Shown here piece by piece: positions 3,127 through 28,860 of a stretch of DNA of 64,000 nt (position 1 is the first letter of the stretch; each line of letters opens with the position of its first letter). A model generated the notes under the pieces. The model was not told where the DNA came from. It worked only from the letters and a program-made list of their open reading frames with translations, and made no database searches. The stretch lies in contig NC_047075.1 in the NCBI RefSeq assembly GCF_902459465.1, forward strand, positions 248,001-312,000, given 5' to 3'. Both the position numbers and the translations under genes were made by a program. The DNA comes from Asterias rubens (taxonomy: Eukaryota).

Positions 3127-3368
3127 AGCTATACAGTTATCTATATGGAAAGATTAAACAGTAAGAAGGTATTGTACTATTGCCAAACAATTCAACCCTT
3201 AATAACATTTCGATGAAGCCCTCAGAAAGAAAAACTAGAATAAGCAGCTATACAGTTATCTATATGGAAAGATTAAACAGTAAGAAGGTATTGTACTATT
3301 GCCAAACAATTCAACCCTTAATAACATTTCGATGAAGCCCTCAGAAAGAAAAACTAGAATAAGCAGCT
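3127..3368. repeat. Perfect 119-bp tandem duplication
   Basis: agctatacagttatctatatgg...aaactagaataagc starts at 3127 and 3246. Confidence 0.9.
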
Positions 3369-22270: not shown

Positions 22271-23984
22271 CTGTCAATCATTGTCAAGTGTTACTGTCAG
22301 TCACTGCTGATCCAAAATCCATCGTAGACTAGTATTTATTAGTAAGTAGTAGTAGATCCTACATTTTAAATGATTTATATCAGTTGTAAAACTAAAGTGG
22401 CGATAATGACACAAAGAACACATAATAACCAATAATACATGAGCATTTACATACCTTTATATTCACTCATACTGCATGAAGTCACCACAACTCAGAGAAT
22501 TCTTGAAGATCGACCAAGTCAGTACCACTCGTTTACCCGTTCTTCAAGATGCTGTGTTGTTTTCTATTTTATTTACGCCCAATTGTGCTCTTTTGTATAT
22601 TCCCAGGGCGTTGCTGTGTGTGAGAAAAATAACGGAGCCCAAGGCTTTGGCGATTGGGCGATTCATAAACATCGCCAAGAGAGGGCGCCCCAACAGGCAA
22701 AGACGGGTACGGGTGTGCGCATCACACATAGTAACCAACATGCTGATGCTAAAATTAATTTAAAACAAATACTTTTTACAAATTTAAAAGTCTCTGAGCC
22801 TCTGTGAAACAAATCAGATTATTTTTCCAACAACTAAACTTCATTTTTATTTTCACAATTTAGTAGGTAAGCCGTAAAAACACCGCCATAAACTAAACCC
22901 AACCCAAACGACTAGAACTCCAGACTTCATCAAATTGACCCTACAGCTTTTAGAAAAATTGGGCCATTTTAAAGGGATGGTACACGTTTGGTAATTACTA
23001 AAAACAAATATTAATTTAAAAACTGACTTGGTATACTGATAGTAGAACACATTGTGGGAAACGGCTCCCTCTGAAGTAGCATACATTTTTTGAAATAGGT
23101 AATTTCTCAATAAAATAATAAAAGACTTCTAGCTAGAAGTAGCTAGAAGTCTTTTATTCCTATCTGAAAGCACACAAATTATTTTGTCCAATAAGGGTGT
23201 TTTTCTTTCATCATTTTCTCGCAACTTCGATGACCAATTGAGCCCAAAAATGTTCACAGGCTTGTTATTTATGCTTATGATGGGATACACCAAGTGAGAA
23301 CACAGGTCTTTGACAATTACCAATAGTGTACAGTGCCTTTAGAGGGCCAGGTCACCCCAACATGAAGTCAACAACCCTAATTGCACAATACTAGAACATT
23401 TTTTTTTCAACAACCCGTACAACCAAATCTCGGCTCCACACGTGAAGTTCTCTCTCAGGTGCACGGCGGAAAGTTGAAACCGCCACACCGGATTGACACG
23501 CTTATGAATGCAATAGAAAGTAAAATAGCTGTTTACAACTTGAGGACATGGATTTTTTTTACATACAGACGACAACACCATGTCCTGCTGACATCTTTCC
23601 GATTGCTCTACGGCCCCAGCGTATTGTTGATCACATAGTAACACAAAATAGTGTTTATTCTTTAGAGAACTTCATACAAACTTGTAAATACCTGCAAACA
23701 ACGGTCGATCTAGGGACCAAGTGAATTGGATTTAATTGTTGGAGTTCGAGATTGGTTTTTTCATTTCAACACAATTCAGTGGATGAATCGAATTGGCACA
23801 GTGAGTTTTAATTTGTTTATTTAATTGCCATTTTTATTTCTTTTTATTTTACACTTCTTTCCTGGAGACAAGCAGAATTCTGTTCCAAACGTCGAGGTTC
23901 GAACCGGCTCTTTCCAGAGCACACTCCCTCAAAAGAGATTTAATTAATACAATGGTTGTACCCGACACACCCGCCAGTTTACTA

Positions 23985-24200
23985 TTTTGGTTACGTTCGT
24001 GTGGATTTTGTTTACGTTCACTTGTAGTTTGTTTACGTTCATGTGGATTAGGTGTACGTTCATGTGGATTTTGTTTACGTTCATGTGGATTGTGTTTACG
24101 TTCATATGGATTGTGTTTACGTCCATGTGGATTGTGTTTACGTTCATGTGAATTTTGTTTACGTTGGGTGTTTGTTTGTTTGGTTGATTGATTGATTGAC

Positions 24201-24231
<31 letters not shown>

Positions 24232-24270
24232 CTGATTGATGGATTGACTGATTGGGTTTGTTTGTTTGTT
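23985..24270. repeat. 21-bp minisatellite followed by (GATT)n and (TTTG)n microsatellites, just before the acceptor of MS4A-like 1
   Basis: About 8 units of ttgtttacgttcatgtggatt, then about 17 gatt units. Confidence 0.9.
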
Positions 24271-24314
24271 TTTACAGGTGACCTGATTGGTTGTATTGTA
24301 AGACTGTAGCAGTG

Positions 24315-27300
24315 ATGGCTTATAAACCTCGAGTAGCTCTTGGAGCCAGTACAACCCTAATCATTTGCAGTTTGATTCTCATGGGTCTTTTTGTAGTGTG
24401 TGCTACTGGCAACTGCATCGCTGGTGAAGTAGCGTTTGGATCACCACTATGGACTGGTGGTCTGGTAATAAACTAGTGTTTAAAACATTCATCTTAAACT
24501 AACTGGGTCAGAATATAACCTGGAGTCCTTGCCCCTGACCCAACTCGAGTCAAGCTGACCCGGAAACTGATTAAAAGGGTTATTTTGACTGTAATTATGT
24601 GTCATCGTTTTGTGTAATAAATTGTTGACACATAATTGACCTAGATATCGACCCCACAAGTTCTTGATCCGGTTCAATTCTGACCCGGGAAAATTTTAGA
24701 ATTAACTTTGGGCTTTCCATTGTCGTAACATGAGGGGGCGGGGGACAGCCGCTGAGTCTCCCGACCACAGCCATTGCTCCAATACAGCACCACAGAACAT
24801 AACTATGTATCTACCAATAAGTAACATGACAAGTAGAAAATCTGTTTCAATTCAGCCTGTAAACAGCAGTCATTCCATTTCCAGATAAAACGAAAGGAAC
24901 GCAATAGGAAATTCCTGTTGTTGTGGTTATAGGTAGCGACTCATACGAAGGTAGCCTATTATACATCCACGGTATTTTAGCATTTGAAACTTTGCATGGT
25001 GGAAATACGATATGGAAAGGTCTGCGGTAACACCATGTTATGATAATTTCTAAATGAGGTGGGGTGGTTTTGAAAAAAAACCCATTGGTTTCATTCATTT
25101 CAATCAGTATGCTCTGATCATCTTCTGCAGCTGTATTTTTACCATGCATCACCGAGCTCCATTTCCCGCCTCTATTTCCCGGTATGCTGGTCATCTCACC
25201 CCCTTGCAAGCTCGCCCCAAACAAAGTCGCCCCCTGCAAAGTCGCCTCCTGACCGGCTCGACCCGGGACTTTTCAAAGTCGCCCCCTTACAATGTCGCCC
25301 CTGGCAAATTCGTCCCTAACAAAGTCGGCCCTAGCAAACTCACCCTCTAACAAAGTCGCCCCAGACAAAGTCGCCCCTAAACAAAGTCCCCCCAGATGTT
25401 ATTTAGTTTGGAAAATGATTGTTAAATAGATTGTTAAGAGGATATTGATTGAGGCCAACATAAAGCCTATGTTTAGTTTGAGTTTGGGTAAAAATCATCA
25501 ATAGATAACTCAATAACTCAATGTATAAAATGTATAAAATGTACATGATTGGCAAGAAATGAATGACAGTGATAATTAATGTTAGATCATTTTAAACAGT
25601 TTAAATATAGGCCTACTCGGGTTTAAAGAAGAGAACCTTCACTATTTTCAATCACCAAATAAAATCTGGAGCGACTTTGCTAGAGGCGACTTTGTCTACC
25701 ACTCAGGTAATTTGCATTTTCTACGTTGTTCTGTGAACGCGCACATAACCACATAGCCATGTAGCGTCCCGAAAAATCACCCCTTGATAAACTTCGTTTT
25801 GGGTTTTTTTTTTCTTCAAAATCTAAACAAACAGGCTTTGTTAACTGGAATAATCGGAGTGTATATGTCAGCAACGAAGTCAGAGAATAGATGTGTAAGT
25901 AGATAACCCTTTGTCTTTTCCTACACAATATTATAACTATTATTTTGTTTGTCGGCCATTTTGGATTTTGGTTTATATTTTGTACATGAAATTTTGATCA
26001 CAATTTTTACTTTATATTTCTACTACCAATAATTGGACCATTTAAGTTTGTTTACTTTCTCTTCAAGATTTTGTCATTTCTTTTCGTCTGTCAGAAATCT
26101 TTGTGTGTTTTTTTGTTGTCCTTAAAAGTGGGTATTAAATCAGCACCCAATGTCGAACATTGTGTATCGTTGCTTTTTTTTGTCAAAATGATGAGGACAA
26201 ACTCCAAAACGCCCTCTAATGGTAGTTGTTGAATTGGTGTATTACATCGTGTGAGATTTATCATTAAAGAATATTCCTCGATTTTTTTCAAGACTTCGGC
26301 TGTGAAATTTACAAGAAAAAGGAGAAGAAAAAACACAGGCAGTGGACGGAAATAAACAAAAATGTTAAATAAAAGGGACCGATTCGAAATCTGCAGGCTA
26401 TTGTTGCCTAAAAGTATTCATAGTTTGTTTAATTTCATTGTAATTTTCTACCCTTTTACACTCAGGGGCCGTTATTCTTAGCTTTGAGCATCATTTGCAT
26501 ATTCATCTCCATTGCATGTATTGGTTTGTCACTATACGCTTCAATAAACGAACTCATCATCTGGAACTTTTTCTTTTGGTTGACCATGGCGACTATGGCT
26601 TTGACTTTGAGTATCGTGTCCTGTGTGACGTCATGTCAATATTGTTGCTGTTGCCAGGAAACACGACCAATACAGGTAAGTTGTTTATTTTCTTTTAACC
26701 TTAATTCTTTAGAGCTGGGTTCTTACTCAAAGTTAAAACAAAGAGTATACTTGCCCTACCATAATTATTAGAAAAACGTTGAGTTCCGATTGTCAACAAA
26801 GATTCGCTTGGCATTCACTTTCTGATTGGAAGGTTGGTATTTTTATTTGTTCATTCATTTTACTCGTTATGTAATAGGGTACTGAAAGGGTTGCCGTAGT
26901 TAGTTCTACCGATAGATCAGGTTTCCACATCAATATGATGCACTTCTTAAGTACAATGTGGTTGAACTTTGTAAATTTATTTACAGCGAAACTTCAACCA
27001 AAAGGCAACCAACATAAGGCGTGATCACTGTCACATGGATACAGCCCGGTATACCTTACATTTTGAATCAGCAATACTTCAATAATAACTTTTACTTATT
27101 ATTTTGTATTCTACCGTAGCAGACTGTTGTTTACCATGGTGGACATCAAGTTCCTCAAAACATCGTTTTAACAAACACCAACACCATCCAGCACCCCCAG
27201 CAACAAGGTCAGCCCCAAATGGTATTCCTTAACCCTTACGGCGCACCCCAGGGAGGGCAATTTGTACCACAGGGTTATTCTGCACCACAAGTACTGAACC

Positions 27301-27977
27301 AGCCACTAGGTGGCGCCCCAGGTTGTCAACTTTGGTATCCACCAACCCCAGTAGATGTACATGTACGTCCATTTGTAGCCCCGGTCCAGCCACACCCCTC
27401 AGCACCACCTCCTCCCCATCAAGAACAAACACCAGTCGCCAACCAGATTAGACCAGTTACAACCGCTCCAGACCAGTCACAGGCAGTTCAACTCTCCACA
27501 ACAGAAAACAACCAATGGACCGCTCCCCAAAGTCAGCCGACTCCATTGACACAAGCTCAGCAAGGCGTTGGTAGCCCTTCGTCTCAGCAATCAGACACAC
27601 CGTCTTCGAAGCCAGTTGCCAACCAGATTAGACCTGTTACAGCCGATCCAAACCAGTCACAGGCAGCTCAACCCTCCACAACTCCTCCCGCACAACCTCC
27701 GAACGTTTATCAGGAATTGATAAAAGAAGAAAACACCCAAAAGAGGTCTCCCGAAGTGCCTGATGATGGGAGTTACGTGGATCCTATTAAGGCGTCTTCA
27801 AGTCCGCCGGAAAACTCGGCATCTCGAATCGATTCTGGAGCTTACGCGTGTATAGAAGAGCCGTCTTATAATTACGCCGATCCTGGGCTGGCGCGGGAGT
27901 TTGTGTCGCCCGCAGAGCGATCCGAGTACGTCAATGACAGTGTCGCCAAGCGACCAGAGGCAAAAAGGCCCAAGTAA
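24315..27977 (+). CDS. MS4A/CD20-like four-pass membrane protein 1 with a long P/Q-rich, tyrosine-motif C-terminal tail, about 425 aa
   Basis: Exons: 24315-24464 (TM1...FGSPLWTGGL), 25835-25894 (ALLTGIIGVYMSATKSENRC), 26466-26675 (TM3, TM4, CQYCCCC), 27120-27977 (tail, TAA). All GT-AG, all phase 0. The P-x-W-x-G motif before TM2 is typical of the CD20/MS4A family. An upstream acceptor TTTACAG at 24277 implies a non-coding first exon. Confidence 0.85.
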
Positions 27978-28860
27978 TAAACTAATCCGAGCTCGCAAAA
28001 ATATAATTCTGCCATATACATGTAGTCACATTATCAATGAAGAAAAAACAGTAGTTCTATAAAAAACAGCTGAAATAACGCAATCATTACAGTCCAAAAT
28101 ATGAATTGTATGTCATTTTATTAGTATGTCATAAATTTAGTAATTATATTTTAAAAGTACTTTAAACAACAAATTAATGGTCAATGTGAAATATTACAAT
28201 TAAAAAGTATTTAAACAACCGTTCTATGTCATCAGTGCCAAGAAATGGAAGTAGCGCACTCATCCCCATTGTGTTTAATTTAAATTTAAAAAAACATCAA
28301 AATACGCGGCGCGTGCTTGTTTTAAGTGTTTGTCATCAAAGATGGCGGACATAGTGCAATAGATCTTAAGATAGATTTAAGTTGTTACTGTGCAGTATCA
28401 CTTTCCAGATTTATTATACGATTATTAACAAACCGTCTCGGATTACTCAAAATTGCCAAACACCCGAAGCTATGGTTGTGACGTCATGATTAAATCAGGT
28501 CCGTTGATGTACATTCGTGCCATTGAGTGATATGAGTTCATGTACAGCCGCCCACAATCATGACGTCACAGAAAATTCAATGCACCAGTGTATTTAATGA
28601 GTTGTAATTAAATCTATTTGTATGAACTTTTCTGTTTAAAGTTGGAAGTCACCATACAAATTACTGAACTGTTTTCGTTACAAATTAATTACAAAATGGT
28701 GAACGATAAGTTGATTTATAATTAGAAAACATTGTCAGAAAATTAAGTACATTCAAGTAAACAGGGAAAAATAACCCAAGTCCGAGCACGAATAATTTGA
28801 TTTTGACAATATTTTTAGAGACACTTTGTTAAAGCCATGTTACACGAAGTACAGGCAACG

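What the first reader, a model, noticed from the sequence alone, without database searches (positions are those of the whole stretch)
24315..27977. MS4A/CD20-like protein carrying a multi-tyrosine adaptor-type tail
Seen: four TMs, a post-TM4 CCCC cluster, then a 285-aa P/Q/S/T-rich tail encoded by one exon. Its distal part holds NVYQEL, SYVDP, AYACI, NYADP and EYVND. Established: VYEEL is the first ITAM tyrosine of Fc-epsilon-RI beta (MS4A2), YxN is the Grb2 SH2 motif, and YxxP is the Crk/Nck/Abl-type SH2 motif; most MS4A tails are far shorter. Inference: an invertebrate MS4A that has acquired a LAT-like phosphotyrosine scaffold, possibly for immune-cell or sensory signalling.
Basis: partly seen in the sequence, partly recalled or inferred. 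Interest (0 to 1): 0.7.

Follow-up and report, generated by a model that had tools for sequence, protein, structure and literature searches.

The report
Sea-star CD20-like protein, tyrosine-motif tail
This is a real, transcribed sea-star gene for a very divergent CD20-like four-pass membrane protein whose long disordered cytoplasmic tail keeps five tyrosine motifs across starfish and a brittle star, so it probably works as a membrane docking adaptor, but it is not shown to be a true MS4A.

Summary
Four phase-0 GT..AG coding exons (24315-24464, 25835-25894, 26466-26675, 27120-27977) encode 425 aa: four TM helices, a CCCC cluster after TM4, and a 285-aa single-exon P/Q-rich tail with five Tyr motifs. 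Spliced RNA contigs from three studies carry exactly these joints.

- The family profile does not hit solved MS4A sequences.
- Three other lines place it in the wider CD20-like superfamily: fold matches (MS4A proteins, Fc-epsilon-RI beta, sarcospan), a weak profile link to a Pfam-positive annelid protein, and an identical phase-0 intron four residues after the TM2 P-x-W-x-G motif in canonical CD20-like genes of the same genome.

The family is found in asteroids, an ophiuroid and hemichordates.

In the distal tail, ten positions are invariant across four lineages. Four are tyrosines and three are their specificity residues: YxxL, YxD, YxN.

There is no ITAM. This species has no PPxY, though its relatives do.

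Phosphotyrosine docking is the best reading but is inferred. A sorting or ubiquitin-ligase adaptor role is the main rival.

The parts
24278..24464 (+). Exon holding the start codon. The 5' UTR part is 24278-24314 and the CDS is 24315-24464 (aa 1-50). It encodes the very short N-terminus (MAYK...), TM1, exoplasmic loop 1 with two conserved Cys, and the start of TM2 ending ...SPLWTGGL.
   Evidence: The RNA contigs begin their match at 24278, after an AG, and join 24463/25834. The donor lies in phase 0 four residues after the W of P-x-W-x-G, as in four canonical CD20-like genes of this genome.
25835..25894 (+). 20-aa mini-exon: the rest of TM2 and the cytoplasmic loop SATKSENRC. The loop is nearly invariant in asteroids.
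   Evidence: joints 24463/25834 and 25894/26466.
26466..26675 (+). Exon encoding TM3, a very short exoplasmic loop, TM4 and the juxtamembrane Cys cluster.
26643..26654 (+). CCCC cluster (aa 130-133) directly after TM4, a putative S-palmitoylation site.
   Evidence: Read from the sequence. A cluster of 2-4 Cys at this place is kept in most family members, hemichordates included; the short Acanthaster paralog P0008 lacks it. Palmitoylation itself is inferred.
27120..27977 (+). Tail exon: 285 aa plus the stop codon at 27975-27977. The 3' UTR continues beyond 28150. The acceptor is the first AG of a tag|cag tandem.
   Evidence: The contigs are continuous from 27118 to 28150 with no internal joint.
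27153..27188 (+). Conserved proximal block PQNIVLTNTNTI (aa 152-163), of unknown role.
   Evidence: Nearly identical in Asterias, Acanthaster and both Patiria paralogs, and recognisable in Amphiura.
27417..27419 (+). His240 codon in PPPPH. A. amurensis has PPPPY here, so this species lacks any PPxY motif.
   Evidence: No variant was reported here in the four RNA runs.
27432..27503 (+). Internal repeat unit 1 (aa 245-268, PVANQIRPVT...STT).
   Evidence: The A. amurensis isoform lacks the 60 aa between the two units.
27612..27683 (+). Internal repeat unit 2 (aa 305-328).
27702..27719 (+). NVYQEL: Y337 and L340 are invariant, giving a YxxL motif. Hemichordate relatives have (P)PEYxxLQ here.
27771..27785 (+). 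SYVDP: Y359 and D361 are invariant.
27840..27854 (+). AYACI: Y382 with a hydrophobic residue at +3. The asteroid orthologs have YAYV or YDYV, and Amphiura has YAYV twice.
27870..27884 (+). NYADP: Y392 is invariant and followed by acidic residues. The neighbouring Y390-N391 is deleted in one natural allele.
   Evidence: The 6-nt deletion after 27866 in run X9 and the C>T change at 27862 (P388L) in all four runs are.
27924..27938 (+). EYVND: Y410 and N412 are invariant, a YxN (Grb2-SH2-type) motif. It is followed by a basic KRPxxxxPK C-terminus.

Best explanation
The locus is an expressed gene of a sea star, almost certainly Asterias rubens. It encodes a strongly diverged member of the CD20-like four-pass membrane protein superfamily. 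Relatives were found only in asteroids, an ophiuroid and hemichordates.

Shown:
- the exon structure and its transcription;
- four TM helices with short loops;
- a fold closest to MS4A, Fc-epsilon-RI beta and sarcospan;
- an intron position shared with canonical CD20-like genes;
- a juxtamembrane Cys cluster kept in most family members;
- a collinear set of tyrosine motifs (YxxL, YxD, YxxI/V, Y-acidic, YxN) kept across two echinoderm classes inside an otherwise fast-changing disordered tail.

Inferred:
- Both termini are cytoplasmic, by the positive-inside rule. The long Thr-rich loop 3 of the orthologs, which has a glycosylation sequon in Acanthaster, fits this.
- The Cys cluster is palmitoylated.
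- The tail is a docking scaffold, most likely phosphorylated on the conserved tyrosines by Src-type kinases. Phosphotyrosines would then recruit SH2 proteins: Grb2/Drk at YVN, Src/Syk/SHP/PLC-gamma types at YxxL and YxxI, Crk/Nck types at YVDP and YADP.
- The four-helix core pairs with an unidentified partner receptor, as Fc-epsilon-RI beta does.
- The YxxL and YxxI motifs may also act as AP-2 sorting signals.
For: Gene and transcript.

Orthologs and paralogs.

Fold:
- Foldseek against Swiss-Prot models puts nine MS4A-family proteins first (E 3e-4 to 5e-3), followed by TMEM196, ENTREP2 and TMEM176B.
- Among solved structures, Fc-epsilon-RI beta is first at E 3e-3.
- With the better model (pLDDT 77), VIA-align gives sarcospan Z 17.4 and 16.7, Fc-epsilon-RI beta Z 16.1 and 14.6, and CD20 Z 12.2.

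Sequence link:
- The three-species profile hits the Owenia protein P0010 at E 3.6e-4 over 1.8 billion proteins.
- P0010 passes Pfam CD20 with 37.4 bits against a cut-off of 27.9. The Ptychodera relative P0011 scores 23.4 bits.
- hhalign of the family against P0010 gives E 5.9e-5 and probability 65%.

Shared intron: four PF04103-detected genes on C3, C19, C2 and C10 end their first TM exon in phase 0 exactly four residues after the W of P-x-W-x-G, as this gene does.

Tail:
- The invariant distal positions are Y337, L340, Y359, D361, S379, Y392, Y410, N412, P424 and K425.
- The motifs come in the same order in Asterias, Acanthaster and Patiria; in Amphiura the YxxL/YAYV pair is duplicated.
- The distal tail is acidic, pI 4.7, and 6.3% Tyr.
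- Against A. amurensis the tail is 94% identical while the TM core is 80% identical. By my count from the alignment, 15 of the 26 core differences fall in the two exoplasmic loop regions.
- Two natural variants, P388L and loss of Y390-N391, leave all five conserved tyrosines intact.
Against: - No datum shows tyrosine phosphorylation, palmitoylation, membrane orientation or any partner.
- Pfam CD20 does not reach even E 10 on this protein family. The profile misses solved MS4A sequences.
- Four-helix bundles cross-match easily. The tool's own note puts noise for helical models near Z 13-14, so Z 16-17 is only modestly above it.
- There is only one YxN, and no ITAM or ITIM in the tail.
- YxxL and YxxI are equally good AP-2 sorting signals.
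- All relatives except this species carry PPxY, which points to WW-domain ligases rather than SH2 proteins.
- The alignment of a low-complexity tail favours matching rare residues such as Tyr, so the p-value is optimistic.
- The tissues of the RNA runs are unknown, so nothing supports an immune-cell or sensory role.
Confidence: 0.5

Rival explanations
1. Sorting or ubiquitin-ligase adaptor. The tail would work mainly without SH2 proteins. YxxL and YxxI would be AP-2 endocytic signals. The PPxY motifs of the family would recruit NEDD4-type WW-domain E3 ligases. The protein would then steer itself or a partner receptor into endosomes, as ENTREP/FAM189A2, NDFIP or LAPTM proteins do.
For: - PPxY is present in A. 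amurensis, Acanthaster (two copies), Patiria, Amphiura, and in the hemichordates Saccoglossus and Glandiceps. In Saccoglossus one PPxY overlaps the YxxL motif (PPEYISL).
- That overlap is the layout I recall from the IFITM3 PPNYEML motif (own knowledge, not tested here).
- ENTREP2, which has a CD20-homology region plus a long PPxY tail, is among the fold matches. Its PPxY-ITCH binding is published (PMC8811627).
- YQEL and YACI fit the YxxPhi pattern.
Against: - The protein in this window has no PPxY at all: PPPPH and PPNVY. It still keeps every other tyrosine motif.
- The invariant +2 Asn of YVN and the +2 Asp of YVD are not explained by AP-2 or WW binding.
- Five conserved tyrosines are more than sorting needs.
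Confidence: 0.25
2. True MS4A ortholog. It would work as MS4A proteins are proposed to, as a channel or chemoreceptor subunit or as an Fc-epsilon-RI-beta-type ITAM amplifier, with the tail a lineage-specific appendage.
For: MS4A proteins are the top nine Swiss-Prot fold matches, and Fc-epsilon-RI beta is the best solved match by Foldseek. The TM2 motif P-L-W-x-G and the KSE..C loop look like the same region of CD20 as I recall it; I did not test that resemblance.
Against: - No Pfam CD20 match, and no profile hit to solved CD20 or Fc-epsilon-RI beta sequences.
- The TM1 Gln seen in canonical CD20-like genes of this genome is absent here.
- The N-terminus is only about 4-9 residues.
- No ITAM.
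- Sarcospan, TMEM196, ENTREP2 and TMEM176B match about as well.
- Published analysis found no bona fide MS4A outside jawed vertebrates (PMC2826416).
Confidence: 0.1
3. Structural or accessory four-pass subunit of a membrane complex, sarcospan-like. The tail tyrosines and prolines would be constitutive, phosphorylation-independent binding sites, or stickers of a condensate-forming Q/P-rich region.
For: Sarcospan is the best VIA-align match, Z 17.4. The proximal tail is 18% Gln and 18% Pro with spaced aromatic residues. The conserved PQNIVLxNTNTI block is unexplained by any tyrosine model.
Against: Sarcospan has no comparable tail. The conserved +2 and +3 residues after the tyrosines fit SH2 or AP-2 type recognition better than generic stickiness. 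The Q/P-rich part is the least conserved part of the tail, and 60 aa of it are missing in the A. amurensis isoform.
Confidence: 0.1

Closest known systems
Fc-epsilon-RI beta (MS4A2) and the MS4A family
   Same: Four-helix transmembrane core with short loops. Best solved structural match by Foldseek (8y81_B, E 3e-3), and Z 16.1 and 14.6 by VIA-align. Nine MS4A-family proteins head the Swiss-Prot fold list. The C-terminal tail carries a YxxL motif and is predicted to be cytoplasmic.
   Different: No Pfam CD20 match and no profile hit to the solved sequences. No ITAM spacing. The N-terminus is nearly absent. The tail, about 290 aa, is several times longer. The family is found only in echinoderms and hemichordates.
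ENTREP / FAM189 proteins (CD20-homology region plus long PPxY tail)
   Same: Short N-terminus, CD20-like membrane region, then a roughly 300-aa Pro-rich disordered cytoplasmic tail with short docking motifs. ENTREP2 appears among the fold matches. Orthologs of this gene carry PPxY. PPxY-ITCH binding is shown for ENTREP (PMC8811627).
   Different: This species' protein has no PPxY. There is no detectable sequence similarity in the tail. The multi-tyrosine acidic distal region has no ENTREP counterpart that I know of.
LAT / NTAL / PAG-type transmembrane adaptor proteins
   Same: By analogy only: a juxtamembrane Cys cluster, a disordered cytoplasmic tail, several conserved tyrosine motifs including a YxN, and no enzymatic domain.
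   Different: Those adaptors are single-pass; this protein is four-pass. It has only one YxN. There is no homology: Pfam finds nothing in the tail and the Atlas feature search of the distal tail gave no usable hit.
Sarcospan
   Same: Highest VIA-align scores: 8yt8_S at Z 17.4, rmsd 2.8 over 134 residues, and 9c3c_n at Z 16.7. It is a four-pass protein that I recall being grouped with CD20-like proteins (own knowledge, not verified here).
   Different: Sarcospan has short termini and no tyrosine-motif tail. Sequence identity is 11-13%.
Canonical CD20-like (PF04103) genes of the same genome, on C3, C19, C2 and C10
   Same: The same P-x-W-x-G motif in TM2, with a phase-0 intron exactly four residues after the W. 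At one C3 locus TM3, the loop and TM4 lie in a single exon, as here.
   Different: Those genes are detected by PF04103 and keep the TM1 Gln. This gene and its C15 paralogs are not detected, and the family profile does not hit those loci.

Membership tests
CD20-like superfamily (Pfam PF04103 sense) | Match to the PF04103 HMM above its gathering score (27.9 bits) | tested here: not met
   No CD20 hit at E <= 10 on the four exon translations or on the A. amurensis ortholog. None at E <= 1 on the Acanthaster, Patiria, Amphiura and short-paralog proteins. The PF04103 genome scan hits C3, C19, C2 and C10, not C15.
CD20-like superfamily (Pfam PF04103 sense) | Four TM helices with short loops and both termini on the cytoplasmic side | tested here: met
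   Hydropathy. AlphaFold helices at 5-32, 44-64, 70-99 and 105-132. Orientation is inferred only: Lys/Arg sit in the N-terminus and loop 2, and loop 3 of the orthologs is Thr-rich, with a glycosylation sequon in Acanthaster.
CD20-like superfamily (Pfam PF04103 sense) | Fold closest to solved or modelled family members | tested here: met
   MS4A proteins, Fc-epsilon-RI beta and sarcospan lead each list. The margins over generic four-helix bundles are modest (Foldseek E 3e-4 to 3e-3; Z 16-17 against helical noise of about 13-14).
CD20-like superfamily (Pfam PF04103 sense) | Significant sequence-profile link to a Pfam-positive member | tested here: inconclusive
   The profile hits Owenia P0010 at E 3.6e-4. 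P0010 scores 37.4 bits on PF04103, and Ptychodera P0011 scores 23.4 bits, below the cut-off. hhalign probability is only 65% and covers TM1-TM2 only.
CD20-like superfamily (Pfam PF04103 sense) | Gene structure shared with canonical members | tested here: met
   A phase-0 donor four residues after the W of P-x-W-x-G in this gene and in four of four PF04103-detected genes of the same genome.
MS4A family proper (vertebrate MS4A1-20 clade) | Phylogenetic placement inside the MS4A clade | not testable with these tools
   No vertebrate MS4A, TMEM176 or ENTREP sequences could be obtained. Zuccolo et al. 2010 found no bona fide MS4A in invertebrates (PMC2826416).
MS4A family proper (vertebrate MS4A1-20 clade) | Sequence-profile match to solved MS4A proteins (CD20, Fc-epsilon-RI beta) | tested here: not met
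   The 8-sequence family profile searched against all PDB sequences at E <= 10 gave only an unrelated mannanase at E 0.36.
ITAM-bearing signalling subunit | YxxL/I, 6-12 residues, YxxL/I | tested here: not met
   A regular-expression scan finds no ITAM in this protein or in any ortholog. YQEL and YACI are 45 residues apart.
LAT-type transmembrane adaptor | Single-pass membrane anchor with a minimal ectodomain | tested here: not met
   Four TM helices.
LAT-type transmembrane adaptor | Juxtamembrane Cys motif and several conserved Tyr docking motifs including YxN | tested here: met
   The CCCC cluster is conserved in most family members. Five collinear Tyr motifs, one of them a YxN with invariant Asn. 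This is met at sequence level only.
LAT-type transmembrane adaptor | Palmitoylation, inducible tyrosine phosphorylation and SH2 recruitment | not testable with these tools
   Needs biochemistry.
ENTREP/FAM189-type PPxY adaptor | PPxY motifs in the cytoplasmic tail | tested here: not met
   None in this window's protein. PPxY is present in A. amurensis, Acanthaster, Patiria, Amphiura, Saccoglossus and Glandiceps relatives.

The most novel reading that the evidence does not exclude
Echinoderms and hemichordates own a private family of palmitoylated four-pass transmembrane adaptors. In this reading a CD20-like chassis independently acquired a phosphotyrosine and PPxY docking tail. It would do for still-unknown echinoderm receptors what Fc-epsilon-RI beta and LAT/PAG do in vertebrate immune cells. 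The fast-evolving exoplasmic loops would track a partner or ligand, while the cytoplasmic motifs stay fixed.
Probability: 0.25. Interest if true: 0.7.

Novelty: new variant of a known kind. Interest (0 to 1): 0.45.

Why it matters
Echinoderm signalling is known to use Src-family kinases and SH2 proteins (own knowledge), but I know of no described membrane scaffold that gathers them. This work turns an uncharacterised gene into a small defined family with a testable motif map. RefSeq names the relatives 'uncharacterized', 'pollen-specific extensin-like' or 'DDB_G0291608'. The map consists of five specific tyrosines, one Cys cluster, and a PPxY that this species has lost.

It also bears on a disagreement in the literature about whether invertebrate CD20-like genes share ancestry with the vertebrate CD20/MS4A group. 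The shared intron position argues for common descent of this divergent family with canonical CD20-like genes, even though the HMM fails.

If the tail proves to be only a sorting signal, the finding is an ordinary lineage-specific membrane protein.

Tried and rejected
- Pfam on each exon translation and on all orthologs gave no CD20 and nothing else credible.
- The family profile against PDB sequences gave no relevant hit.
- The Atlas feature search of the TM core gave CD20-bearing clusters only at 0.83-0.84, which the tool rates as a lead only. The same search on the distal tail gave no usable hit.
- Paper searches for the RefSeq names of the Acanthaster and Patiria orthologs found nothing. 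A search meant to document the sarcospan-CD20 relation found nothing useful, so that relation is cited from memory only.
- The look-up of encoding contigs had no record for P0002 or P0005. I therefore could not compute dN/dS between Asterias species or inspect the full-length Patiria locus.
- tblastn of the Owenia protein against the canonical CD20-like loci was too insensitive. It was replaced by direct translation at the PF04103 hit coordinates. One of those loci has a masked N stretch just upstream, which I left alone.
- ITAM, ITIM, ITSM, NPxY and di-leucine scans found nothing in the tail. The single ITIM-like match, SLYASI, lies inside TM3.
- An Rfam histone stem-loop match in intron 1 (20.5 bits against a gathering score of 34) was treated as chance.


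Full report
**1. What is in the sequence**

Reading 24000-28300 and assembling the candidate exons gives four coding exons: 24315-24464, 25835-25894, 26466-26675 and 27120-27977. Each has a length divisible by three and GT..AG borders. Together they encode 425 aa.

Hydropathy and two AlphaFold models of the near-identical A. amurensis core (pLDDT 69 and 77) give four helices at about residues 5-32, 44-64, 70-99 and 105-132. The N-terminus is only a handful of residues.

Residues 130-133 are CCCC. Exon 4 alone encodes 285 aa. The proximal tail is about 18% Pro and 18% Gln. The distal 95 aa are acidic (pI 4.7) with 6.3% Tyr.

**2. Is the gene real and is the distal exon used?**

Contigs from public runs were laid on 24200-28150.
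- Two contigs of about 2.57 kb (runs X5 and X6) carry all three predicted joints with GT..AG ends and cross exon 4 without interruption to beyond 28150.
- X1 carries all three joints on separate contigs.
- X9, from another study, carries the exon 3/4 joint.

Intron-less joined forms in runs from three studies show a spliced transcript, although the runs' library type is recorded only as a guess.

The ATG exon starts at 24278, and about 338 nt of the contigs lie further upstream, so at least one non-coding exon precedes the model. The acceptor of exon 4 is the first AG of a tag|cag tandem.

Two natural variants appear. C>T at 27862 (P388L) is in all four runs and in an ENA protein (P0001). A 6-nt deletion after 27866 that removes Y390-N391 is in X9. 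Neither touches a conserved tyrosine.

**3. Organism and relatives**

The assembly has 417.6 Mb in 150 contigs. Contig C15 is 14,674,731 bp long. That is the length recorded for the contig carrying Asterias rubens LOC117299525. The window is therefore almost certainly A. rubens.

Long-tailed orthologs:
- A. amurensis P0002, 367 aa
- Acanthaster planci P0003, 461 aa, named 'pollen-specific LRR extensin-like' in RefSeq
- Patiria miniata P0005/P0013, 470/471 aa, and the paralog P0004
- the brittle star Amphiura filiformis P0006, 401 aa

Short paralogs without the tail motifs exist in Asterias (P0007/P0014, 182 aa) and Acanthaster (P0008).

More distant relatives come from the hemichordates Ptychodera, Saccoglossus and Glandiceps.

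In this genome the family profile hits only C15:
- this gene;
- the short paralog about 67 kb upstream, on the same strand, matched in four pieces that fit the same four coding exons;
- a possible third exon-1-like ORF near 193.3 kb on the other strand.

No sea-urchin, sea-cucumber or crinoid member surfaced. That is not evidence of absence.

**4. Is it MS4A/CD20-like?**

*Against.* Pfam CD20 (PF04103) gives nothing at E <= 10 on the exon translations or on P0002. It gives nothing at E <= 1 on the other echinoderm proteins. A PF04103 scan of the whole genome finds genes on C3, C19, C2 and C10 but not this locus. An 8-sequence family profile finds no CD20 or Fc-epsilon-RI beta among all PDB sequences.

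*For a more distant relationship.*
- (a) Fold. Nine MS4A-family proteins head the Swiss-Prot model list (E 3e-4 to 5e-3), followed by TMEM196, ENTREP2 and TMEM176B. Fc-epsilon-RI beta is the best solved match by Foldseek. With the better model, VIA-align ranks sarcospan (Z 17.4, 16.7) and Fc-epsilon-RI beta (Z 16.1, 14.6) first, with CD20 at 12.2. The tool warns that helical models reach Z of about 13-14 by arrangement alone, so this is supportive but not decisive.
- (b) Profile link. The three-species profile reaches an annelid protein (Owenia P0010) at E 3.6e-4 in a library of 1.8 billion proteins. P0010 passes Pfam CD20 at 37.4 bits. The Ptychodera family member reaches 23.4 bits. hhalign of the family against P0010 gives E 5.9e-5 and probability 65% over TM1-TM2.
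- (c) Gene structure. At four of four PF04103-detected loci in this genome, the first TM exon ends in phase 0 exactly four residues after the W of a P-x-W-x-G motif (..YWAGFS|gt..IWAGIG|gt..YWAGIV|gt..IWTGIF|gt). This gene ends ..LWTGGL|gt in the same phase. At one C3 locus TM3, the loop and TM4 sit in one exon, as here.

An identical intron position and phase next to the same motif is hard to get by convergence.

*Conclusion.* This is a divergent branch of the CD20-like superfamily. It is not shown to be an MS4A. Zuccolo et al. 2010 concluded that invertebrates lack bona fide MS4A genes (PMC2826416). The shared intron adds a kind of evidence not mentioned in the passages of that paper I read.

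**5. The tail**

A local-pair MAFFT alignment of the tails of A. rubens, A. amurensis, Acanthaster, Patiria and Amphiura shows the tyrosine motifs in the same order in the asteroids; in Amphiura the YxxL/YAYV pair is duplicated:

| Motif | Forms seen |
|---|---|
| 1 | YQEL / YQPL / YM(P/Q)L |
| 2 | Y(V/I)D |
| 3 | YACI / YAYV / YDYV |
| 4 | Y(A/D)(D/E) |
| 5 | Y(V/L)N |

In the distal tail the only positions invariant across the four lineages are Y337, L340, Y359, D361, S379, Y392, Y410, N412, P424 and K425. That is four of six tyrosines against six of 95 other residues (Fisher p = 7e-4). Three of the non-Tyr invariants are the +3 Leu, the +2 Asp and the +2 Asn of the motifs.

The p-value is optimistic, because aligners favour matching rare residues. 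Collinearity and conservation of the specificity positions do not depend on it.

Between the two Asterias species the tail is 94% identical at aligned positions, and the TM core only 80%. By my count from that alignment, 15 of the 26 core differences fall in the two predicted exoplasmic loop regions (33-43 and 96-106). Across orders, loop 3 varies from about 5 residues in Asterias to 35-45 Thr-rich residues. So the outside changes quickly and the cytoplasmic motifs do not.

The first motif is older than echinoderms. Hemichordate relatives end in (P)PEY-x-x-L-Q, followed in Saccoglossus and Glandiceps by PPEY.

PPxY is present in every long-tailed relative examined and in two of the three hemichordate relatives (Ptychodera has none). 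It is absent in this window's protein: PPPPH where A. amurensis has PPPPY, and PPNVY at the first motif.

No ITAM, ITIM or ITSM is present in the tail. The likeness of NVYQEL to the Fc-epsilon-RI beta VYEEL goes no deeper than Y..L.

A 60-aa segment between two 24-aa direct repeats (27432-27503 and 27612-27683) is missing in the A. amurensis isoform. This marks the Q/P-rich middle as dispensable spacer.

**6. Mechanism**

*Shown:*
- a four-helix membrane core;
- a juxtamembrane Cys cluster kept in most family members;
- a long low-complexity tail with conserved short motifs.

*Inferred.* Cytoplasmic termini follow from Lys/Arg in the N-terminus and loop 2, none in loops 1 and 3, and a Thr-rich loop 3 in the orthologs, with a glycosylation sequon in Acanthaster. 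On that topology the tail faces kinases and adaptors.

The best single reading is a docking scaffold. The Cys cluster would be palmitoylated. The conserved tyrosines in acidic context would be phosphorylated and read by SH2 domains. An invariant Asn at +2 is the hallmark of Grb2-type binding, YxxL/I fits Src, Syk, SHP and PLC-gamma types, and YxDP/YADP fits Crk/Nck types. These assignments rest on established knowledge and were not tested here. I give this about 0.5 for a docking role in general, and less for SH2 docking specifically.

The main rival, at 0.25, is a sorting or ubiquitin-ligase adaptor in the manner of ENTREP (PMC8811627). It is favoured by the family's PPxY motifs and by YxxPhi signals. 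It is disfavoured for this species by the loss of PPxY with retention of all the other motifs. The two readings are not exclusive. Nothing supports a particular cell type.

**7. Novelty and verdict**

This is an uncharacterised family found only in echinoderms and hemichordates, and it sits below the Pfam detection limit. It combines a known chassis (CD20-like) with a known kind of tail (short-motif adaptor) in an arrangement not described for either. That makes it a new variant of a known kind.

The functional idea is reasonable, gains real support from motif conservation, and remains unproven. Interest 0.45.

Noticed in passing
window 24982-25153 (intron 1): A short element inside intron 1 has very high summed contig depth (up to about 69,000) in all four runs. 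It is carried by many short contigs with diverging loose ends, which suggests a dispersed, heavily transcribed repeat rather than part of this gene. A sub-threshold Rfam histone 3' stem-loop match (20.5 bits against a gathering score of 34) lies at 25040-25087 on the minus strand.
   Followed up: partly
window 23984-24254: A 21-bp minisatellite (8.7 copies, 23984-24165) is followed by a (TTGA)n run (24172-24254). They sit directly upstream of the acceptor of the ATG exon at 24278.
   Followed up: no
window 25200-25396 (intron 1): A 15/31-bp tandem repeat with the unit CAAAGTCGCCCC.., about 8 copies at 75-78% match.
   Followed up: no
G000:C15:203728-205385 (+) and about 193336-193464 (-), outside the window: A tail-less 182-aa paralog (A. 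rubens LOC117299525), matched in four pieces consistent with the same four coding exons, lies about 67 kb upstream. A third exon-1-like ORF (..LIFGLLLISLWVACFERC...APLWTG) lies 10 kb further on the other strand. Together they form a small family cluster.
   Followed up: partly
L005:13080-13900 (Patiria miniata paralog P0004): The RefSeq model of this paralog leaves the conserved frame in the tail exon. Another frame continues with DIQHTYE.., YTYTYAG and LYEYVIDP motifs after an internal duplication. It then carries a stop codon exactly where the orthologs have the tyrosine of YVN. The cause could be a frameshifted model, an assembly error or a decaying paralog.
   Followed up: partly
window 27862 and 27867-27872: The reference allele has Pro388, but all four RNA runs and an ENA protein have Leu. 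One run has an in-frame loss of Tyr390-Asn391.
   Followed up: partly
window 27153-27188: The block PQNIVLTNTNTI, about 20 residues after TM4, is the best-conserved stretch of the proximal tail in asteroids. It contains no tyrosine, and no model here explains it.
   Followed up: no
L008 (G000:C3:20307000-20316000), just upstream of locus position 3214: A masked N stretch directly precedes the first TM exon of a canonical CD20-like gene. It was left untouched, and only the sequence beside it was read.
   Followed up: no
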